Shown in pieces: positions 4,188 through 33,969 of a DNA stretch of 64,000 bases (its first letter is position 1; every line of letters begins with the position of its first letter). The stretch spans positions 124,001-188,000 of the forward strand of contig JAIVFI010000019.1 in assembly GCA_025558095.1 (NCBI GenBank), written 5' to 3'. Under the pieces are notes generated by a model. That model did no database searches, had not been told where the DNA came from, and saw only the letters and a list, made by a program, of their open reading frames with translations. The stretch is from Hyaloraphidium curvatum SAG 235-1 (lineage: Eukaryota > Fungi > Monoblepharomycota). The position numbers were made by a program, and so were the translations under genes.

Positions 4188-5437
4188 TCAGGAGAAGTCG
4201 GTAACCACTTTCCTGCCTATGATAGTCCCCTTCTCGAGCTCCTCGAAGATGTGCGGCACCTCGGACAGCTTGCAAGTGGAGGTGATCGGCCGCACTTTGC
4301 CCTCGGCAACGAGCTTCACGGCCATTTCGGCGTCCTGCGTCCGAAAAAACTAAGTGAGTAACCTGGACGACTGGAAGAGGGTAGATGCGGTACACTGACC
4401 TCCGGGTTGCCAATTTGACTGCCAATGATCTTCATGTCATTGACAAGGATCGTCAAGGGCGTGAGTTTGATGTCGCCTTCCACGATGCCTGGGAAATATC
4501 CAGTTCAGCAGCAATTGGAGGCTTGAGACAACCCACATGAAAGACTCACCAAGGAAAACGATAGCTCCGCCGCCGCGCATGCAGCTGGGAGCGTTCTCGA
4601 ACGCTATCGGCGCCGTAGTGACCAAAAGGTGGGCGTCCAATCCCCCGTCGGTGGCCTTCTTGACCTCCTCGCCCAGGTTCGCCCCCGCCTTCCTCGCGTT
4701 CACCAGCACGTCGGCTCCGACGGCTTTTGCCTCCTTCAGCTTCACGTCGTCCACGTCGATCGAAGCGACCTTGTACCCCAGCGCCTTGGCGACCTGAATC
4801 CCCATCAACCCCAGGCCGCCGGCACCCGAGAACCCGATCCAGCCTCCGGCAGGCGGATTCGCGCGGCGGATGGCGGCCGTCATCGTCGCCCCGGCGCAAC
4901 CACAGGGTCCAGCCTGCTCGAAAGTGACGTTGTCCGGTATGCGGACGATCGCCTTGGGATTGGCGACGACGTATTCGGCATAGCAACCCCAAATATCGAT
5001 TGCATGGGCTTTCTTCTTCGCGCACTGGAGCTTGAGGTCCCGCTGGCAGAAACCGCAATCCCCGCAGCTCCCGCCGAACATGGGAACGAAGACCTTGAGC
5101 AACGTCGTCAGAGCCACAGAGTGGGGTCAAAGCCACAGAGTGGGCAAAATCGTCAGTCAGAGCCACAGAGCTGTCGAGGCACAGCTCAACCAACCCGATC
5201 TCCCACGGCCCAGCCTTCGGCCTTGCTGCCGACCTGGGCTATCGTCCCCGAGCCCTCATGGCCCAAGACATGGGGGAACGAGAGGCCGGGGAATCCCACT
5301 CGCGAAAGGAACTCGTCCGTATGACAGACGCCGCAGGCTTCGACCTTGACGAGGACCTGATCGTCCGCGATGGTGGGCGTCTGGATCTGCTCCACCTTCA
5401 GCGGCAGCCCGATCCCGTGCATGACCAGCGCGGTCAT
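4188..5437 (-). CDS. Zinc-dependent alcohol dehydrogenase (MDR family), multi-exon; a short upstream exon is possible
   Basis: CGVCHTD, GHEGSG, structural Zn motif CGDCGFC...C, and Rossmann GAGGLG. Confidence 0.92.
5107..5170. repeat. Three near-identical copies of GTCAGAGCCACAGAG(TGGG) inside an ADH intron
   Basis: Copies at ~5107-5125, 5126-5144 and 5156-5170. Confidence 0.8.
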
Positions 5438-26309: not shown

Positions 26310-26862
26310 CTCGGCGATGGCGGAGGATCGATGCTGGACGCGGGCGGAAACGCGCGCGCTTGCTCACGTGAAGATCCTCCCCTCTTGTTCTCCGTTTCGC
26401 GATGTGTGGAAATCCATCAGTAAGTCGTCGCTATCGAGGACGATGGATGATGCTCGCTTTTGCGATGCCGGCGTACCTTCCGTTTCGAATCGCCAATGGA
26501 CCAACGGCGGTTCGTGTGGGGCGAGCCGAAAGCATGTACTAATTCGTCACTCCATACTTGGCTATGTTCTATTCTATCACTGCTCACAGTCCGATGCCGG
26601 TGCATATGGAAGCTTCGATGCCGTCGTCGGAAACCCCGGCACTTCGGAAGCCGGATGCGAGCAAACGATGCCACCACGACCGTGACGCCTGGTGCACGGG
26701 TGGCCGTTCGGAGGGGCCCACCGGCCCGCACAGAATCCGAAAGCAACCGGTTCCGCGCCGATGATTAGCGGCATGTATCGGCGGCAATCGGAATCCTCCG
26801 GTCCCTTCTAAGCCTCCGTATAATGAGGAGCTAGCAATCCCACCGTACACTTAGAAATCCCC

Positions 26863-29800
26863 CTACGCCCCAAGAGTCAGCTCCTCATCTACATTCAAAC
26901 CAAATGCGACCGGCGCGGGGGCCGGAGCGTTGACAGCGGCGGCTTCGGTGCACAGCTGAAGCCAGTGTTGGAGTTGGGCCGCGACGCCAAGAGCCCAGGC
27001 CACCGCGATCCGTTCGCGGAAGCGCCGCACAAAACGAGAGTAAAGGCCATCGAGGTCCACGGGCTGCCCATCGCGGCCGACGATCCCGGGATACTGGATG
27101 CGCCCCATCTCCGAGGAGAAGCGCGAGAAAGTGGCAGAGACAGCGCTGTACGAATCAAAAGCAAGCACGATCAGAGGGTAGAAGTTGGCGTTGAAGACGA
27201 AACGGGAGTAGTCCTTCCTGGCGGCCTCGACCCGCCGTTCGACTGCGTGGCCCGGGACCGAGAAGACCAGGCCCGTGTGCAAATGGGCCATAGAGGTGAG
27301 GGTCTTGATCTCGAGCAACCACCGTTTCCGGGTTTCGCGGTGCGTGATGAGAACGTCGCCAAGGCGGCCAGCATCCGCAGGCGTGGGCGGGGTGACAGTC
27401 TCGTAGCCATGCACAAGGAGGTTTGGCGGCATGGGGTGCACGCGGAGGAGCGGGATGGAGCGAAGCGCCGCGCGGATGGCCGCGCAAATGTCGTCGTGAC
27501 CAGGACTGAAGAGATCCCGGCCATAGCAGCCCGAGAACGCGTGCTCCCCCGTCAGCGACATGGCCGATCGCTTGCAGCCCCGCCGGCAGGGCAAGGAAAG
27601 ACCAGGGTAGTCGGCCTCGTGCAGGAGCGGGAGGCAAAGCCGGAAGCGTACAAGTAAGCGGAAAAAGTTGTTGAGAATGTGGTTGGCAAGCAGCGCGGGA
27701 GAGGCAGTCAGGAAAGCCGACAGGCCGTCCTGCGCCTGGACGAGCCGCTTGCGGCGCTCCAGACCAGCGGAAGTGTCGGGTTGCAAGGCAATCAGAGCCG
27801 CGAGGCGGCGCTGGTCCTCGAGACGCGTAAGGTCGCTCTGCAGGCCGTGCCAGACCGGCTGAGCGAAGAAACTGGCGTCCGCAGGGAGCGTACGGCGGGC
27901 GGGCGCGGCGCCCACCGGTTGCCCAGCACGCGCAGCCTCGGCGTACGCTGCGGCCGTGTCATCCTCGACACGCTCAAAGGCGGGGCGGAGGGCCTCGATG
28001 ACGGGAACCAGTTCCCGCACGTGCTCCACGCCCACACCCCGGGCCGAGGTTCGAAGACCAAGCATTGCGTCCAAGGGGCCCGCCGTGAGGTTGAGTGAAG
28101 ACAGGTAAGCCGCCGAGGCCACCTTCTCCGATGACAGAAGCCCCATCCCCGAGTAGTGCAGACCCAAGAATACCTGCTCCCGCACAGTCCGACCCTCCAC
28201 CGACAGCGGATCCAGATCCTCGGCCCGATCTCCCAGCAAGCGCAAGAAGGTGGTGAAAAGCGCGTTGTCAAGACGTCGAGCAAAGGGTTGGGTAACCGAG
28301 GGGGGGAGAATGCGGAGCCAAAACGAGAAGAGCTGGGTCACACAGAGACGGAGGAGGGAGTACAGGCCCTGGAGGGAGGGGATGTCGGCCGGCATGGCGT
28401 AGCCGAGCGCAGCGCGCTCGATTTCATCGAGAAGAGCGGCAATGGAGTCGATCTTGGCCGCGAGGAACGACTCCACATAGGCAGGGGTGCCGACCGGGGC
28501 ACCTACCACCTTGAGGCCGCACGAGCAAGCGAAGTCAGGCGAGCCCGGGGCCGACGCCGTGGCATGCACCTCGGGGTCGGCCTCGTGAGGCGGGAAGCCA
28601 GCGACGCGGATGTTGTGGGCCGCACCGGCCGCACGCACCCGCTCCAGCACGGCCGGGTTCGTCGAGAGCGAAAGCAGGTAGCTCTTGTCCGGGCGGTGGG
28701 TCATGCCGAGGGAAGCAAGGCCGTCACGCACCTCTCCCAGGACGGCCATGACCGAGTCCAGCGGCCCGACCACGGTGAGGTCGTCGAGGTACCCAAGGAT
28801 GAGGCAGTCGGGGTGCCCAGAGCGGATGGGCCGCAGCATGCGGCTCATGGCGCAGGAGAAGATGGCAGACGACAGCGGGTCGCCCTGGATGTTGCCCTCG
28901 TACATGGTGATCCGGAAAAGGAGCTCCGCCGAGCGCCGGTCGCGGAAGTAGGCGTGGGAAGGGCGCGAGTAAACGAGGTTGTAGTACGGGATAAGCTGAG
29001 GCACCTGGCGGACCACCTCGCGCGCGAAGAGGCGGCGCAGCGTATTGAAGGCGTTCCTAGAGTCGACCTTCATGACGACGTGGTCGGGGAAGGCCGCCAG
29101 CCACGCGTTCACCGCGTGGGCGGTCGCCTCCGCGCCCCCGTCCACCCCGTGACCCAGGTCCTCCTGCTGTTGGAGCTTCCTCAGAAGAGCCTTGTGCCGC
29201 ACGGCCAGGTACGAGCCCGCGAGCCGCGTGATGCCCTCCATAATGCCAATCGGCCGGAGCCCCCCCTCCGGCTTGAGCTGAGGGACGAGGATTTGATCCG
29301 TGAGGAGCGGCCGGAGCATGGGGGTGTCGAGTCGGCCAGTGCACACGCCGTGCACCATGGCCGCCAGCGGGCGGAGCTTCCGCCGCGTCGCGTCGTTCTC
29401 GCAGTTGTGCACGATGAAAAGTTTGGCCATGCTGAAACCCGACATGCCGGCCCCCACGCCGTCCTTCTTCCGGCGCAACCGGGCCCAGATGTCCTCCAGG
29501 AAAGCCGCGTCCGTGTAGGCAGGGCAGGGCACGGGCGCGTTGGGGGGCAGAGACAGCCGACACAGCGGCTCTCCCTCCCGCGGCCCCGGGTACAGCTCCT
29601 CCAGTTCCGCCTGCAGCGTGGGCGTGAAGCCAGCCGGAACGGCCTCCCCCGAGAGGGCCGCGGACGCAGCACCAGGAGCGCCCTTCAAGGCGGCAAGCAC
29701 GATGGCCTTGAAGAGCTGGTAGTTGAGCGGCCGCAGCCCGTCCCGCCGCGCGCCCCGGTTGACCTGACGGGCGGCGAAGTAGTTCTGCTCGTACATGTAG

Positions 29801-30672
29801 TCCCCCGACATGACGTAGCCGCCAAACGCAAGGTAGGCGGTGAGAGTGCGGTGCAGGTCGGTTTCCGGTGCCGCCGGGTCCTCGTAGGCCCGTTGGAAAG
29901 ACTCGCTGGCTCGGAAGGCGAGCGTGCTCCAGGTGGTGGTCCGGTAGCGGTGCTTCAGCGGCTCCGGCGGCGGCGCCCCCGCGCCCCCGCCCGGCGGCGG
30001 ATCAGGCCCGGGACCCCCGGGTGGACCACCGTCGCCCGGGTCGCCCGGATCACCGCCGTGGCCGTGCCCGCCAGCCGCGGCGTTGCCGCCCGGCGCGCCG
30101 TCGCCGCCTGGGGGATCACCGCCGTCCTGGGCGGCACGCGCCGCTGCCGCCGCCGCCGCCAGCGCCGCCAGCGCCGCCCGTTGCGCCTGGCCGTCCTGCG
30201 GGGCGTCGGCCGCAACCCGGGCGGCCGCAAGGGCCGCCATCAGCGCGGGCGCGGGTGGCGAAGCACGGGGAGATACCGACGATGCCGCCGGTGACGCCGG
30301 TCCCTCCGCGCGTCCCGTGGCAGCCGCCCGCTCGGCACGCACGCGGTCGAGGAACTCGACGAGATCGGGTGGAAGCGAAGCTAAAGAGACGCCGAGTGGC
30401 GGGTTAGCTGCGTCCGGGTTGCACGAGGTGTGCTGTCCAGAAACACCGGCACCAGAGGCGTTTGCGGCGTAGGGACGCCGGCAACCCCCGCACCGCGCTA
30501 GCCCCATGGCACGCAACGCATCGGCAGACAGGCGCTGCATCGCCAACCAGTGCTCCGGGCTCCGTGTGACCCGAAGATGACCGTCCCGTTTGTTTTTGTT
30601 TGGAGTTGGCTGGAAGCGGCAACCATCAACCGGGCACGCATGGAGGCCGGGTTCAGCAGGCGCCTCCGCCAT
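26863..30672 (-). CDS. Retrotransposon ORF2: zinc fingers, reverse transcriptase, CCHC finger, PD-(D/E)xK-type endonuclease
   Basis: CPVDGC..H..H; LRPIGIMEGITRL; KVDSRNAFNTL; GNIQGDPLS; GYLDDLTV; KVVGAPVG; CRRGC...HAFSGC; GHDDIC; RLGDVLI..LLEIKT. First ATG is at 30672 (the track starts at TTG 30714). Confidence 0.95.
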   Translation of the reverse strand: MAEAPAEPGLHACPVDGCRFQPTPNKNKRDGHLRVTRSPEHWLAMQRLSADALRAMGLARCGGCRRPYAANASGAGVSGQHTSCNPDAANPPLGVSLASLPPDLVEFLDRVRAERAAATGRAEGPASPAASSVSPRASPPAPALMAALAAARVAADAPQDGQAQRAALAALAAAAAAARAAQDGGDPPGGDGAPGGNAAAGGHGHGGDPGDPGDGGPPGGPGPDPPPGGGAGAPPPEPLKHRYRTTTWSTLAFRASESFQRAYEDPAAPETDLHRTLTAYLAFGGYVMSGDYMYEQNYFAARQVNRGARRDGLRPLNYQLFKAIVLAALKGAPGAASAALSGEAVPAGFTPTLQAELEELYPGPREGEPLCRLSLPPNAPVPCPAYTDAAFLEDIWARLRRKKDGVGAGMSGFSMAKLFIVHNCENDATRRKLRPLAAMVHGVCTGRLDTPMLRPLLTDQILVPQLKPEGGLRPIGIMEGITRLAGSYLAVRHKALLRKLQQQEDLGHGVDGGAEATAHAVNAWLAAFPDHVVMKVDSRNAFNTLRRLFAREVVRQVPQLIPYYNLVYSRPSHAYFRDRRSAELLFRITMYEGNIQGDPLSSAIFSCAMSRMLRPIRSGHPDCLILGYLDDLTVVGPLDSVMAVLGEVRDGLASLGMTHRPDKSYLLSLSTNPAVLERVRAAGAAHNIRVAGFPPHEADPEVHATASAPGSPDFACSCGLKVVGAPVGTPAYVESFLAAKIDSIAALLDEIERAALGYAMPADIPSLQGLYSLLRLCVTQLFSFWLRILPPSVTQPFARRLDNALFTTFLRLLGDRAEDLDPLSVEGRTVREQVFLGLHYSGMGLLSSEKVASAAYLSSLNLTAGPLDAMLGLRTSARGVGVEHVRELVPVIEALRPAFERVEDDTAAAYAEAARAGQPVGAAPARRTLPADASFFAQPVWHGLQSDLTRLEDQRRLAALIALQPDTSAGLERRKRLVQAQDGLSAFLTASPALLANHILNNFFRLLVRFRLCLPLLHEADYPGLSLPCRRGCKRSAMSLTGEHAFSGCYGRDLFSPGHDDICAAIRAALRSIPLLRVHPMPPNLLVHGYETVTPPTPADAGRLGDVLITHRETRKRWLLEIKTLTSMAHLHTGLVFSVPGHAVERRVEAARKDYSRFVFNANFYPLIVLAFDSYSAVSATFSRFSSEMGRIQYPGIVGRDGQPVDLDGLYSRFVRRFRERIAVAWALGVAAQLQHWLQLCTEAAAVNAPAPAPVAFGLNVDEELTLGA

Positions 30673-30766
30673 CGGCACATCGGTGATGATGAGATAGAGC
30701 TCCGATGGTGGCAAAAGCTGCCGCGCAGCGGTGGCAGCTGTAAGGCAGGAGTGGCGTGCGGCTCAT
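30653..30766 (-). CDS. 37-aa zinc-finger micro-ORF MSRTPLLPYSCHRCAAAFATIGALSHHHRCADGGGAC (or a frameshifted N-terminus of ORF2)
   Basis: Translated by hand; matches Y-x-C-x2-C-x3-F-x5-L-x2-H; its ATG overlaps the TGA of the upstream ORF (ATGA). Confidence 0.6.
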   Translation of the reverse strand: MSRTPLLPYSCHRCAAAFATIGALSHHHRCADGGGAC

Positions 30767-31614
30767 GGCGAATACGGTGGCGGCGGCGATGCCGGTGTCC
30801 CGCCGCCAGGATCAGCTACCGCGGACGGTGCCTTGTCCGACGAGATCTCCCAATCGTCGAGCGCATGTGTCCGCATCCAAACCTCCTGTGACTCGGTCAG
30901 GTCGCCCCCCGCCCTGTGCCAGGCCGCAAGCGCCGACCACGCGTCACCGATAGCATCACGGCCGCCGTCATCGAGGAGCTCGGAACCTGGCCATTCGAGG
31001 TGCGCCGGCGAACCGGGCTCCGTGTGAGCATACCAAGGAGGCAAGGTGCGCGTCGGAGTGGATACTTCCGAGGAGCTCTGCCCCCCCCCGGCCGTTGGTG
31101 CCGGCGGCGTGCCGGGGGTTGTGCGGGGCGGCGCAGGCGGCAGCTGCAAGCTCGGCACGGCAGTTGCAGCTGGGGTTTCCCACGGAGGATGGCCTGGGTG
31201 CGCCGAGAGCATGGAAGCGGCCGAAGCCGGGGCATCAGCGATCAAGATCTGCGATGACGAGGAGGGAGATACTTCCGAGCATGCCGCCCCTTTCCCCCCC
31301 GCTGGTGCCGGCAAGCGGGAGGAGCCGCGGGGCGGCGTGGGCAGAGTGTGACCCTCGGCCAAGCTAGGCACGGCATTTGGCCGAGGGGCCCCGGGGGACG
31401 CGGGGTCAATGTCGGAAGTCTCCCCTGCTGCCGCGAACGGCCTCGGAACTCGGTGAGACGTTGTAGATAGTGGTAGTTGGCGTACCGGTGAAGACTGCAA
31501 AACAGCAAAAGATGGAGGGGCTGACCGCGCCCGGGAGGTATCCGGACGAGCTCGGCGCCGAGAAGAGCAGCCCACTACTCGGCGTTGCCACTTGCTTGGT
31601 GGTGTTTTAGGCAT
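30763..31614 (-). CDS. Retrotransposon intermediate ORF (283 aa, Pro/Ser-rich, Trp-containing helical segment near the C-terminus)
   Basis: ATG overlaps the end of ORF1 by 8 nt; same reading frame as ORF2, separated from it by a single TGA. Confidence 0.45.
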   Translation of the reverse strand: MPKTPPSKWQRRVVGCSSRRRARPDTSRARSAPPSFAVLQSSPVRQLPLSTTSHRVPRPFAAAGETSDIDPASPGAPRPNAVPSLAEGHTLPTPPRGSSRLPAPAGGKGAACSEVSPSSSSQILIADAPASAASMLSAHPGHPPWETPAATAVPSLQLPPAPPRTTPGTPPAPTAGGGQSSSEVSTPTRTLPPWYAHTEPGSPAHLEWPGSELLDDGGRDAIGDAWSALAAWHRAGGDLTESQEVWMRTHALDDWEISSDKAPSAVADPGGGTPASPPPPYSP

Positions 31615-33754
31615 TCAAGGACGGTGAGCCAGGAGCCGGCAGCAGGGATCCGGTTGACGTGGAGGCGGCCTTGGCCTGGGGGGAGCCGGGCTTGCGAACG
31701 GCCGCCTTGGCCTTCCGTTCCGCTTTGGCGGATTTGACGTCGATTTGCTGATACGGCTTGGCAACCTTGTCCGGGTTTGTCCCTGCCACATCCTCCACGG
31801 GACGGCCCTTGCCTGCGTGCTTGGGGCCTGGGGCCATCGTAGGATCACCAACCGCGGATGCCCCAGCGGCCTCATCGGCCGTGTGCATGTCTTCGCTTGG
31901 TGCCTCCGAGTTCGAACCATCGCCCTCAGCAGAGGCTTCGGAGGCGGCGTCGTTTCCAACCGAGGCCTCAGAGCCGGTGGCATCCTCCTCCATCGCAGAT
32001 TCCGTGCCCTCCATTGCGGGAGCAGCAAGCTCCAGATCCTCCAGCGCGGTATTGGCTGCAACCTGCTGTGCAGCACTGCTGATGGCGTTCTCAGCGGCCA
32101 GCTGGTCGGCACCACCCATGTCCTCGTCCCCATCCTTGTCAGCCGGCTCCAAAATGGGAAGACCATGGAAATCCATCTTTTCGGCGGCGTCAGACTCCCC
32201 CCAATCGACCGAAGCACCGGCACCACCACCACCGAGTGCCGAAAACCTGTTGTGGGACGCCTTGGCCACTGGCTGGGCAAGAGCTGGGGGCGCAGAGCCT
32301 GCGCGCTTGCCGGACGGCCCAGCTGTAAGCCACTCGTCGGCCGCAGGGGCGGTGGGGGAAGCCAGATGCGGAGGAACGACCTCTTCCCTCAGGGGGGGCA
32401 GCCGCGGGGTCGTGGCGGGCTCCACCATTGGGGGAGAGAGCCGTACGTTGGCCGGGTTGTGAATGCAGTCCGCCTCGTGCGCACGGCGTGCTTGCGGGCT
32501 GGCAAAGGCGCCGGGATTCATGCGGTTGAGACCGTCTGGGCAGTAAGCACAGTTGGTGCACGTGGCATCGTCACCGACGTGGCCGCCCGTGCGCTTGCAG
32601 TGGCCGCACTGTCCGTTGCTACTGTCATAGCGGACAGCTGGGCGAAGGAACTTGTGCTGGAGGAGCGTCCCCCACGAGTCAAGGAAGCAGTACGAGGGTG
32701 GGCCAATGCGTGCTGCGCGGTCAAAGAAGGCATCAACCCCGCACTGCGAGACGTCGAAAGTGACCCGCCAGAAGGCGTTGCTGTCGGTGCCCGAGATGGG
32801 AGCCGCTTCAATGACTTGGCAAGGGGCCCCATAGTGGTTCTGGAAAGTCGCGTAGAGGCGGGCCCACCAGTCCGGGCACTCGTACACCGAACCAGGGACG
32901 ATCATGGGCCCGATCTTGAGCTCGGCGTGCGTGTCCTTGAAGACAGGGTGGATGCGCAGCCGACGCGTCGGGCCGTTTGGGAACTTGACCTCCAGCACCC
33001 CCTGCTCCACCAAGGCGTTGATAGCGTCTGCCCCGTCGACAGCACCAACAACACAGAAGAGGTCCAGTCGCGAGTAACGCGGGTTGTAGCCTCGCGTCTC
33101 GGTCGTGAAGACGGTGGTGGGGAAGGTCGCCTTCGCCACGGCTTCAGCGACGACGCGCCGTCGGTCCTTTGGCACACCGTTGAGGTCGATGAGGCAGTGG
33201 GGGACAGGCCCAATGAAGGCCGGCGTGTAGCCCCGACCGTTGGCGTGCGGTTGCACCCGATCGATGAGCTTGGCGTAGTTGGTGGGCGCCGAGAAAGGCA
33301 TGGCAGAAGCCAGATGCTCCGCCATCGCGCCGTCCGTGACACGAACAATCGGGCGGTCGGGCGAGGTGCGCGACGTTGCTGCGGCGAAAGAGCGAGACCC
33401 CAGGCGCGTGGCGGGGGCGGTTGCTTTCGGGAGACGATTCTGCTGAGCCGGCTCCTCCCGGGCGCCGCCGTTGGCGGACGCGGGGCGGATTTCAGTGGTC
33501 GATTCAGCAGCGTCCTCCTTAGAACCTGTCAGCTGAGCCGTAGCACCAGCGGGGGCCGGCGCGGGCTCCTCTGCCGCGCCAGGGAGGCGAGGAGAGGCAG
33601 CGACGCCGGGAGCGTGGGAAGAGTGGACGGGATTCGCAAGCGCCTCCGAGGAGGCCGCGGCGAGCGCAGGGGAGACCTTGCCATCAGGCAGGACCACGGG
33701 AGCGGCCGCATCATTGGGCCCCTGCCCTGTGTCAGGGGGGTCCATTAGTTGCAT
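31607..33754 (-). CDS. Retrotransposon ORF1, gag-like nucleic-acid-binding protein
   Basis: Intronless frame open to 33856; CGHCKRTGGHVGDDATCTNCAYC zinc-knuckle-like cluster; acidic/disordered tail; co-oriented upstream of the RT ORF. Confidence 0.75.
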   Translation of the reverse strand: MQLMDPPDTGQGPNDAAAPVVLPDGKVSPALAAASSEALANPVHSSHAPGVAASPRLPGAAEEPAPAPAGATAQLTGSKEDAAESTTEIRPASANGGAREEPAQQNRLPKATAPATRLGSRSFAAATSRTSPDRPIVRVTDGAMAEHLASAMPFSAPTNYAKLIDRVQPHANGRGYTPAFIGPVPHCLIDLNGVPKDRRRVVAEAVAKATFPTTVFTTETRGYNPRYSRLDLFCVVGAVDGADAINALVEQGVLEVKFPNGPTRRLRIHPVFKDTHAELKIGPMIVPGSVYECPDWWARLYATFQNHYGAPCQVIEAAPISGTDSNAFWRVTFDVSQCGVDAFFDRAARIGPPSYCFLDSWGTLLQHKFLRPAVRYDSSNGQCGHCKRTGGHVGDDATCTNCAYCPDGLNRMNPGAFASPQARRAHEADCIHNPANVRLSPPMVEPATTPRLPPLREEVVPPHLASPTAPAADEWLTAGPSGKRAGSAPPALAQPVAKASHNRFSALGGGGAGASVDWGESDAAEKMDFHGLPILEPADKDGDEDMGGADQLAAENAISSAAQQVAANTALEDLELAAPAMEGTESAMEEDATGSEASVGNDAASEASAEGDGSNSEAPSEDMHTADEAAGASAVGDPTMAPGPKHAGKGRPVEDVAGTNPDKVAKPYQQIDVKSAKAERKAKAAVRKPGSPQAKAASTSTGSLLPAPGSPSLNA

Positions 33755-33969
33755 CTGCCGAGACGGGCGTTCATGGGACGTCTCAGAGCCGGCGCTGAGA
33801 CGCGCTGTGCCGGTCCCTTCGAGGTCAAAAGGAGCGCGCGGCGAAGCTTCGGGCACGACCGACGTACTGTCCTTTCACATTCCACCTTTCACCTTAAGTG
33901 CCTGTGAGTGACACCCTCGGCTGGTCTCAGTTCTACGACTGACATCCTTCCCTCCAGGCCACCGGTGAA

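What the first reader, a model, noticed from the sequence alone, without database searches (positions are those of the whole stretch)
30653..33754. Retrotransposon coding region arranged as a chain of overlapping, apparently translationally coupled ORFs
Seen on the minus strand: ORF1 ends AATGCCTAA with the next ATG (31614) inside it. That 283-aa ORF ends in ATGA, and this ATG (30766) opens a 37-aa ORF. The 37-aa ORF overlaps the first ATG (30672) of the RT ORF by 20 nt. The 283-aa ORF and the RT ORF are also in the same frame, separated only by one TGA (30763-30765). Known: RLE-type non-LTR elements usually have one ORF, or two in SLACS/CZAR. Inference: this could be a polycistronic design using termination-reinitiation, UGA readthrough and/or frameshifting to dose RT, which I do not recognise from described CRE-like elements.
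Basis: partly seen in the sequence, partly recalled or inferred. Interest (0 to 1): 0.8.

Follow-up and report, generated by a model that had tools for sequence, protein, structure and literature searches.

The report
Damaged copy of three-ORF retrotransposon
This is one broken copy of a young, multi-copy jumping gene: its odd 37-codon mini-gene and in-frame stop come from a private 17-base deletion, while intact copies carry three reading frames that touch end to end through small stop/start overlaps.

Summary
Two of the four junction features are private damage.

- **The deletion.** Twenty-six other copies carry 17 extra bases just after the first zinc finger. With them, the "37-aa ORF" is the N-terminus of a continuous 1303-aa zinc-finger/RT/endonuclease ORF. 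That ORF starts at the ATG of ATGA and lies in a different frame from the 283-aa ORF. UGA readthrough and the micro-ORF are therefore not part of the element's design.
- **What is family-wide.** ORF1 (712 aa) overlaps a 283-aa middle ORF at ATGCCTAA. The middle ORF overlaps the RT ORF at ATGA. Both overlaps are fixed in every copy examined, and all three ORFs are intact in 8 of 11 full-length copies.
- **Is the tiling chance?** Such exact tiling arose in 5 of 40,000 shuffles.
- **Is the middle ORF a gene?** This is unsettled. It has no homologue, no codon periodicity, is mostly predicted disordered, and shows only a weak synonymous excess.
- **Mechanism.** Sequential termination-reinitiation is the best reading (about 50%). 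It has precedents in SART1 and victoriviruses but is untested here. I found no slippery site, significant RNA fold or 18S complementarity.

Other first-stage notes on this genome describe the same three-ORF layout at other copies. I rate it a new variant of a known kind, of moderate interest.

The parts
26818..33746 (-). One full-length but defective copy (6929 bp) of a multi-copy non-LTR retrotransposon. The 3' end reads ...CTCCTCATTA followed by a short CA-type tail.
   Evidence: The limits of similarity to about 20 other copies at 97-100% identity define the ends.
31607..33745 (-). ORF1, 712 aa, starting at the family-conserved ATG at element position 2. It has a structured central part with Cys/His knuckle-like motifs and a disordered acidic/Ala-rich tail. 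It looks gag/ORF1p-like, but this is only a lead.
   Evidence: ORF1 is intact in 16/16 copies. Codon-position GC is 0.69/0.57/0.72. Lineage-level dN/dS is about 0.23. It has no Pfam or word-search hit. The nearest Atlas clusters carry zf-CCHC/RRM/ZCCHC3-like RNA-binding domains at scores of 0.85-0.90.
31607..31614 (-). Junction 1, ATGCCTAA. The ORF-M ATG lies 5 nt upstream of the ORF1 TAA stop, and a TGA closes the ORF-M frame immediately before that ATG.
   Evidence: Read from the sequence and identical in 16/16 copies.
30763..31614 (-). Middle ORF (ORF-M), 283 aa, rich in Pro/Ser/Ala/Thr. It is an orphan and its status as a gene is unresolved.
   Evidence: It is open in all 21 complete copies. 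It has 0 hits among 1.84 billion representative proteins. Codon-position GC is flat at 0.67/0.70/0.65. AF2 mean pLDDT is 50, with only two confident helices at aa 218-250. Synonymous changes are 14 observed against 10.0 expected, p=0.09, with no excess in the other two frames.
30763..30766 (-). Junction 2, ATGA. The ORF-M stop (TGA) overlaps the start codon of the ZF-RT-RLE ORF.
   Evidence: Read from the sequence and identical in 26/26 copies.
30653..30766 (-). It is the true N-terminus of the RT ORF, including the first C2H2 zinc finger (C-x2-C-x12-H-x3-H), cut off by a frameshift in this copy.
   Evidence: In intact copies this frame continues for 1303 aa. The C2H2 regex matches at aa 11.
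30682..30683 (-). Site of the private 17-nt deletion. The other copies carry 17 extra bases between these two positions. Placement is ambiguous by 1 nt because of a shared C.
   Evidence: Alignment of 27 copies. The sister copy L026 shares this copy's local SNPs but keeps the 17 nt.
26863..30714 (-). Remainder of the RT ORF, now shifted into the ORF-M frame. It holds the second zinc finger, a Gly/Pro/Ala low-complexity region, the RT domain (YLDD at 28780-28791) and the C-terminal CCHC + PD-(D/E)XK-like endonuclease (27304-27588). It also carries an in-frame 9-nt insertion relative to other copies.
   Evidence: Pfam RVT_1 E=7.6e-10. Motif coordinates. Lineage-level dN/dS is about 0.18.
33747..33820 (-). 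Copy-specific 5' junction. It consists of 63 nt of extra sequence containing a CTCTGAGA motif, then an 11-nt candidate target-site duplication GAAGGGACCGG (33810-33820). The other copy of that duplication is at 26798-26808.
   Evidence: The 63-nt segment has no second copy in the genome.

Best explanation
**What is shown.** The window holds a dead copy of a young, recently active non-LTR retrotransposon with an RT and a C-terminal restriction-like endonuclease. The family has at least 50 copies or fragments in a 32-Mb genome. Intact copies encode three ORFs that tile the RNA end to end:

- ORF1, 712 aa, with lineage-level dN/dS of about 0.23.
- ORF-M, 283 aa.
- A 1303-aa ORF with two N-terminal zinc fingers, RT and endonuclease.

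ORF1 and ORF-M overlap by 8 nt (AUGCCUAA). ORF-M and the RT ORF overlap by 4 nt (AUGA). The window copy lost 17 nt just after the first zinc finger. That loss truncates the RT ORF to 37 codons and, by accident, puts the rest of it in frame with ORF-M behind the UGA.

**What is inferred.** In intact copies, ribosomes finishing ORF1 reinitiate at the AUG 5 nt upstream of its stop. They translate ORF-M, terminate at UGA and reinitiate at the overlapping AUG. Two low-efficiency restarts in series would make RT far scarcer than ORF1 protein. ORF-M would then serve mainly as a translated relay, possibly with a small helical C-terminal module, rather than as a conserved protein.
For: **Architecture**
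- The 17-nt gap is private to this copy: 1 of 27 copies lacks the bases.
- Intact ORF lengths are 712/283/1303 aa, with identical overlaps in all copies. All three ORFs are intact in 8 of 11 full-length copies.

**Tiling is not chance**
- The middle frame was fully open in 60 of 5000 dinucleotide shuffles.
- An ATG-to-stop tiling within 24 nt of both ends arose in 5 of 40,000 shuffles.

**The RT start must be at AUGA**
- It is the first AUG of that frame, which is open only 15 codons upstream. The zinc finger begins 9 residues later.
- Thirty-four upstream ATG triplets argue against leaky scanning.
- No X XXY YYZ heptamer lies in the 49-nt window shared by the two frames.

**Hint that ORF-M is read in its own frame**
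- Synonymous changes are 14 observed against 10.0 expected in its own frame. The other two frames show 7 against 8.3 and 7 against 9.4.

**Precedents**
- SART1 links ORF1 and ORF2 by UAAUG coupling (PMC3894237, PMC10275272).
- AUGA/UAAUG stop-restart occurs in victoriviruses and a hypovirus (PMC6631646).
- Reinitiation after long ORFs has stop and start within about 20 nt, with the start sometimes upstream of the stop, at 3-20% efficiency (PMC10275272).
Against: - ORF-M has no homologue anywhere (0 hits).
- It has no codon-position GC periodicity, unlike ORF1 and RT.
- Its language-model 'recognition' score is low.
- It is predicted disordered over about 85% of its length.
- Its six lineage-level substitutions are 5 non-synonymous to 1 synonymous, against 14:22 in RT (Fisher p=0.075).
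- The synonymous excess over all variants is only p=0.09.
- No local RNA fold stands out near either junction (z from -0.9 to +0.1).
- Complementarity to this organism's 18S helix 26 is at chance level.
- Copies are 97-100% identical, so 'fixed in all copies' carries little weight as evidence of selection.
Confidence: 0.55

Rival explanations
1. ORF-M is not a functional gene. It is a relic or spacer that is open by descent, for example the former disordered C-terminal tail of ORF1 or a former N-terminal extension of the RT ORF, cut off by a frameshift in the family's founder. RT would then be made by another route, such as internal initiation, a separate transcript, or direct reinitiation after ORF1.
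For: - ORF-M is an orphan, compositionally flat and mostly disordered, with shared substitutions at 5N:1S.
- The three distant relatives of the RT are single-ORF elements of 1319-1722 aa. Two of them, P0001 and P0002, have long low-complexity regions ahead of the RT. ORF-M plus RT totals 1586 aa, a similar length.
- The family is too young for an unused frame to have decayed: about 0.75 stop-creating changes were expected among 30 variants and none was seen.
Against: - A random frameshift would not be expected to leave an AUG exactly overlapping the new stop at both ends. The tiling arose in 5 of 40,000 shuffles.
- The weak synonymous excess is specific to the ORF-M frame.
- No copy shows a different or fused arrangement, including the older roughly 96-97% copy L045.
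Confidence: 0.3
2. The overlaps are recoding sites. A +1 shift at GCC-UAA-A would fuse ORF1 to ORF-M, and/or a -1 shift before UGA would fuse ORF-M to RT, giving gag-pol-like fusion proteins.
For: - ORF-M is +1 relative to ORF1, and the RT frame is -1 relative to ORF-M.
- Shifting at a stop codon is known in other systems. This point rests on my own knowledge of antizyme and RF2 and was not tested here.
Against: - The ORF-M frame is closed by a TGA immediately before its AUG, leaving a window of only two codons for a +1 shift.
- No canonical slippery heptamer lies in the 49-nt window for a -1 shift.
- No significant stimulatory structure was predicted downstream.
Confidence: 0.07
3. One reading: the 37-aa micro-ORF, the in-frame UGA and the 20-nt overlap are functional parts of the element, dosing RT by readthrough or frameshifting.
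For: These features are literally present in this copy.
Against: - They exist in 1 of 27 copies.
- All others have 17 more bases and one continuous 1303-aa ORF in a different frame from ORF-M.
- The nearest sister copy keeps the 17 nt.
Confidence: 0.02

Closest known systems
SART1 (Bombyx mori telomeric non-LTR element), with ORF1/ORF2 UAAUG translational coupling
   Same: It is a non-LTR retrotransposon whose downstream ORF start overlaps the upstream stop, with no intergenic spacer. ORF2 is made by termination-dependent reinitiation (PMC3894237, PMC10275272).
   Different: SART1 is an APE-type element with two ORFs and a UAAUG overlap, and it needs a downstream RNA structure. Here the endonuclease is restriction-like, there are three ORFs and two overlaps (AUGCCUAA, AUGA), and no structure was detected.
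SLACS/CZAR and CRE1/CRE2 (CRE clade of RLE-type non-LTR elements), and the fungal MoTeR/FoTeR/Cnl1 relatives
   Same: All share an RT followed by a C-terminal CCHC plus PD-(D/E)XK-like endonuclease. Here the order of REL motifs is kept and there are N-terminal zinc fingers (motif definition from PMC12857005).
   Different: - The published REL spacing pattern is not met strictly: X10 instead of X7-8 in CCHC, GHD for RHD, LGD for R/KPD.
- Targets are dispersed sites next to a TCTGAGA motif, not spliced-leader genes or telomeres.
- FoTeR and MoTeR have a single ORF (PMC12857005).
- From my own knowledge, SLACS and CZAR have two ORFs. This element has three.
- Clade membership was not tested by phylogeny.
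Victorivirus CP/RdRp AUGA stop-restart, and calicivirus / influenza B TURBS reinitiation
   Same: The tetranucleotide AUGA links a long upstream ORF to the polymerase ORF. Stop and start lie within 20 nt, and the polymerase is expected to be made at a few percent of the upstream product (PMC6631646, PMC10275272).
   Different: Those systems are RNA viruses with one junction and a required upstream pseudoknot or 18S-complementary motif. No such element was found here, although pseudoknots could not be predicted with the tools at hand.

Membership tests
Non-LTR retrotransposon, restriction-like-endonuclease (RLE) type | Reverse transcriptase domain with a YxDD active site | tested here: met
   Pfam RVT_1 E=7.6e-10, 39.3 bits against a cutoff of 29.6. 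YLDD is at aa 662 of the intact ORF.
Non-LTR retrotransposon, restriction-like-endonuclease (RLE) type | C-terminal CCHC motif followed by the REL motifs: C[X1-3]C[X7-8]H[X3-4]C[X9-10]RHD/N..E..R/KPD.X12-14.D/E (pattern quoted in PMC12857005) | tested here: inconclusive
   The strict pattern gives no match. A relaxed pattern matches aa 1063-1155 as C-X3-C-X10-H-X4-C-X8-GHD-X30-E-X12-LGD-X14-E(IK), so order and acidic residues are kept while spacings and flanking residues deviate. No sequence hit to solved R2 structures at E<=0.01.
Non-LTR retrotransposon, restriction-like-endonuclease (RLE) type | TPRT hallmarks: no LTRs, frequent 5' truncation, target-site duplications, variable 5' junctions | tested here: met
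   Many copies share the 3' end and start at different internal positions. TSDs are 9-14 nt, with 4-63 extra nt at the 5' junction.
CRE clade (CRE1/2, SLACS, CZAR) | Phylogenetic placement of the RT/REL domains within the clade | not tested
The only relatives found are three unnamed metagenomic proteins at 26-28% identity.
CRE clade (CRE1/2, SLACS, CZAR) | Site-specific insertion in spliced-leader RNA genes | tested here: not met
   Copies lie on more than 20 contigs in unrelated flanks. The common feature is a (C/T)TCTGAGA motif 7-8 nt upstream of the TSD.
Termination-reinitiation after a long ORF ('scenario 2' of PMC10275272) | Stop of the upstream ORF and AUG of the downstream ORF within about 20 nt, out of frame, often sharing nucleotides | tested here: met
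   AUGCCUAA (8-nt overlap) and AUGA (4-nt overlap), fixed in all copies.
Termination-reinitiation after a long ORF ('scenario 2' of PMC10275272) | Cis element near the junction: a TURBS-like 18S complementarity or a structured RNA or pseudoknot | tested here: inconclusive
   The best complement to the host 18S h26 is 6-7 nt, reached by 198/300 and 57/300 shuffles. MFE z-scores range from -0.9 to +0.1. An 8-bp GGCGGCGG/CCGCCGCC hairpin lies just upstream of AUGA, but pseudoknots cannot be predicted with these tools.
Termination-reinitiation after a long ORF ('scenario 2' of PMC10275272) | Downstream ORF translation depends on termination of the upstream ORF | not testable with these tools
   This needs reporters or ribosome profiling.

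The most novel reading that the evidence does not exclude
An RLE-type non-LTR retrotransposon is truly tricistronic. Two termination-reinitiation events in series (AUGCCUAA, then AUGA) pass ribosomes from a gag-like ORF1 through an orphan, largely disordered 283-aa 'relay' ORF to the RT. This would set RT at a small fraction of ORF1 protein without frameshifting, an IRES or a known TURBS element. I know of no such relay in any retrotransposon, and an ORF1 plus middle ORF is unusual for RLE elements, which are mostly single-ORF.
Probability: 0.4. Interest if true: 0.6.

Novelty: new variant of a known kind. Interest (0 to 1): 0.38.

Why it matters
For the scan, this shows that the most eye-catching features of the finding (micro-ORF, in-frame UGA) are decay in one copy, not design.

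What remains is a young, probably still active RLE-type retrotransposon with at least 8 fully intact copies. It has three tiled ORFs and a short target motif. If the two overlaps really couple translation, it would extend SART1-style stop/start coupling to RLE elements and to a two-step relay. It would also give a compact natural system for studying reinitiation after long ORFs in a microbial eukaryote. RLE/R2-type elements with defined short targets are also of practical interest as insertion tools.

Tried and rejected
- **Relatives of ORF-M.** An exhaustive HMMER search gave 0 hits, Pfam gave none, and BLASTP against the N-termini of the three distant RT relatives gave nothing.
- **Relatives of ORF1.** The word search found none. 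The AF2 single-sequence model of residues 120-500 had pLDDT 42.6. I did not use it for fold search.
- **Diverged sister families in the same genome.** There are none, only this one family at 97-100% identity plus a few degraded fragments. Deep conservation of ORF-M therefore cannot be assessed.
- **Relatives elsewhere.** Only three metagenomic single-ORF proteins at 26-28% identity, on 5-6 kb contigs with no ORF1 or ORF-M.
- **Frameshift signals.** No slippery heptamer lies in the usable window.
- **RNA structure and TURBS-like 18S complementarity.** Not above chance.
- **Splicing out of the middle region.** ORF1 and RT share a frame in intact copies, which raised this idea. None of about 25 copies lacks the middle region, so there is no sign of a spliced RNA template.
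- **5' transduction source.** The 63-nt extra 5' sequence of this copy has no second copy in the genome.
- **Host identity.** Not determined. An 18S gene was found but there is no taxonomy tool for it.


Full report
**1. The observation**

- ORF1 ends ...AAT GCC TAA, with the stop at 31607-31609.
- An ATG at 31612-31614 inside that string opens a 283-aa ORF (30763-31614). A TGA sits immediately upstream of it in the same frame.
- The 283-aa ORF ends in ATGA.
- That ATG (30764-30766) opens a 37-aa frame ending at 30653.
- The ATG at 30672 lies 20 nt inside it.

Translation of 30640-30780 shows the 283-aa frame passing through a single TGA into the RT frame.

**2. What the other copies show**

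The host assembly has 32 Mb in 55 contigs, and the window is C19:124001-188000. It holds at least 50 copies or fragments of this element at 97-100% identity, many of them 5'-truncated. The limits of similarity put the element at window 26818-33746.

I aligned 27 copies across the junction.
- The window copy alone lacks 17 nt directly after the codons for ...SHHH of the first zinc finger.
- L026 shares the window copy's three local SNPs and still has the 17 nt. The loss is therefore private to this insertion.

With the 17 nt present, the '37-aa ORF' simply continues. Copies such as L031 have a 1303-aa ORF starting at the ATG of ATGA. It contains:
- two N-terminal C2H2-type fingers;
- a Gly/Pro/Ala-rich stretch;
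- the RT domain, with YLDD;
- a C-terminal CCHC plus PD-(D/E)XK-like block.

In those copies the 283-aa ORF and the RT ORF are in different frames. Three features are therefore consequences of one private deletion: the micro-ORF, the 'same frame, one TGA' relation and the 20-nt overlap.

The ORF1 start at 33754 is also private. It lies in copy-specific sequence 5' of the conserved end. The conserved ATG is at 33745, position 2 of the element.

**3. What is family-wide**

In 16 of 16 copies that reach the 5' part, ORF1 is 712 aa, the middle ORF (ORF-M) is 283 aa, and the strings ATGCCTAA and ATGA are unchanged. ATGA is unchanged in 26 of 26 copies. Eight of 11 full-length copies have all three ORFs intact. 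The real architecture is three tiled ORFs with 8-nt and 4-nt overlaps. Other first-stage notes on this genome describe the same layout at other copies.

**4. Is the tiling chance?**

The genome is about 67% G+C, so long open frames are common. One example is a 712-aa antisense ORF opposite the RT.

| Shuffle test | Result |
|---|---|
| ORF-M frame fully open, dinucleotide shuffles | 60 / 5000 |
| Any frame fully open, dinucleotide shuffles | 175 / 5000 |
| ATG-started ORF beginning within 24 nt of the ORF1 end and stopping within 24 nt of the RT start | 5 / 40,000 |

The arrangement is not accidental. A frame left open by recent descent from a longer ORF remains a non-chance alternative.

**5. 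Is ORF-M a gene?**

Evidence against:
- It has no homologue among 1.84 billion representative proteins and no Pfam hit.
- Its codon-position G+C is flat at 0.67/0.70/0.65. ORF1 is 0.69/0.57/0.72 and RT is 0.71/0.53/0.80.
- Its language-model recognition score is low.
- AF2 predicts disorder except for two helices at aa 218-250, with pLDDT 81-90.
- Substitutions shared by two or more copies reflect evolution of the transposing lineages. On the same 15 copies these are as follows:

| Region | Synonymous | Non-synonymous | dN/dS |
|---|---|---|---|
| ORF1 | 9 | 6 | about 0.23 |
| RT (to element position 4964) | 10 | 5 | about 0.18 |
| ORF-M | 1 | 5 | about 1.9 |

Over all copies and the whole RT ORF the counts are ORF1 9:8, RT 22:14 and ORF-M 1:5, synonymous to non-synonymous. 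Fisher's test of ORF-M against the whole RT ORF gives p=0.075.

Evidence for:
- After correcting for the mutation spectrum (CpG transitions, other transitions, transversions), all variants in ORF-M give 14 synonymous against 10.0 expected in its own frame (p=0.09). The other two frames give 7 against 8.3 and 7 against 9.4. ORF1 gives 18 against 12.1 (p=0.03) and RT gives 35 against 21.3 (p=0.0004).
- No stop or frameshift is seen in 21 complete copies. Only about 0.75 stop-creating changes were expected, so this carries little weight.
- An older copy, L045 at about 96-97% identity, has an in-frame 3-nt insertion in ORF-M. It also has a 1-nt loss in a G8 run that breaks the frame.

My verdict is that the question is unresolved, with a slight lean towards 'translated'.

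**6. Mechanism**

- The RT-frame AUG in AUGA is the first AUG of a frame that is open only 15 codons upstream, and the zinc finger starts 9 residues later. RT translation must therefore begin at or just before this point.
- Thirty-four upstream ATG triplets make leaky scanning implausible.
- No X XXY YYZ heptamer lies in the 49-nt window where a -1 shift could fuse ORF-M to RT.
- A +1 shift from ORF1 into ORF-M has only two codons of room.
- None of about 25 copies lacks the middle region, so there is no sign of splicing.

Coupled termination-reinitiation fits the geometry.
- Reviews describe reinitiation after long ORFs with stop and start within about 20 nt, the start sometimes upstream of the stop, and efficiencies of 3-20% (PMC10275272).
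- AUGA and UAAUG are the recognised motifs in victoriviruses and a hypovirus (PMC6631646).
- SART1 is a retrotransposon precedent (PMC3894237).

I could not find the accessory signals those systems need.
- Folds of 90-nt windows around both junctions are not better than shuffles.
- Complementarity to this organism's 18S helix 26 is at chance level.
- An 8-bp GC hairpin lies just upstream of AUGA, but pseudoknots cannot be evaluated here.

I rate sequential reinitiation at about 50%, a non-functional ORF-M with another route to RT at about 30%, and recoding fusions at about 7%.

**7. Classification**

The RT (Pfam RVT_1), the motif order of the REL domain, the zinc fingers, the TSDs and the 5' truncations place the element among RLE-type non-LTR retrotransposons.

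- The published REL spacing pattern (quoted in PMC12857005) is met only in relaxed form.
- There is no sequence-level hit to solved R2 structures.
- The only relatives are three metagenomic single-ORF proteins at 26-28% identity.
- 'CRE-like' was not tested by phylogeny, and the CRE-clade hallmark of spliced-leader gene targeting is not met.
- Insertions are dispersed. Most lie 7-8 nt downstream of a (C/T)TCTGAGA motif, with 9-14-nt TSDs, 4-63 extra nucleotides at the 5' junction and occasional head-to-tail pairs.
- ORF1 has no detectable homologue. Its nearest Atlas clusters carry CCHC knuckles and RRM/ZCCHC3-type RNA-binding domains at scores of 0.85-0.90, which is only a lead.

**8. Verdict**

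The conserved core is three ORFs chained by AUGCCUAA and AUGA in an RLE-type element. It is real, non-random and unusual, because RLE elements are mostly single-ORF. Its mechanism and the status of the middle ORF remain inferences. I rate it a new variant of a known kind, of moderate interest.

All translations of intact ORFs come from natural copies.

Noticed in passing
5' flanks of copies L031-L046, e.g. L031:440-500. In the window, 33747-33809.: Most insertions sit 7-8 nt downstream of a (C/T)TCTGAGA motif in the target, about 12 of 16 copies by eye. TSDs are 9-14 nt, and 4-63 non-element nucleotides lie between the TSD and the element 5' end. Three recurrent 5' end types track the subfamilies: ...ATTTACCCGG, ...CCCTGAGGCAG and ...GAGAGT. 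The element therefore appears motif-targeted, not inserted at ordinary sites.
   Followed up: partly
window 33743-33746 (element positions 1-4): The conserved ORF1 ATG is at position 2 of the element, so there is essentially no 5' UTR. Transcription must start in flanking or extra 5' sequence, or from an internal promoter. The window copy's 63-nt extra 5' segment looks like the target-type flank of a parent copy, which would suggest 5' transduction, but it has no second copy in the genome.
   Followed up: partly
G000:C1:231868-245779 (L041/L042); also L044 and L045: Head-to-tail pairs of elements are separated by only about 20-90 nt. Another copy (L035, C1:515045-521981) sits in the same flanking sequence as the L041/L042 pair. 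This suggests either a repeated target or a segmental duplication.
   Followed up: no
G000:C11:512273-513424, 523351-524502, 534430-535581: Three identical 5'-truncated 3' fragments of the element lie at an exact spacing of about 11.08 kb. This looks like a tandem segmental triplication that includes a dead copy.
   Followed up: no
G000:C1:34318-36115, 81263-83060, 112954-114751, 180912-182709, 260152-261949: Five 18S rRNA genes on one contig sit at irregular spacings of 32-79 kb rather than in a tight tandem array.
   Followed up: no
window 28156-30294 (+): A 712-aa open frame runs antisense to the RT ORF. It is most likely a by-product of the GC3-rich coding frame on the other strand, and it shows how easily long ORFs arise in this genome.
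   Followed up: no
element positions about 2447 and 2660 (window about 31300 and 31087, minus strand): ORF-M contains two G7-G8 runs within an internal imperfect duplication (...GG(G/K)...SSEVS(P/T)...). The older copy L045 has its frame-breaking 1-nt loss in the second run.
   Followed up: partly
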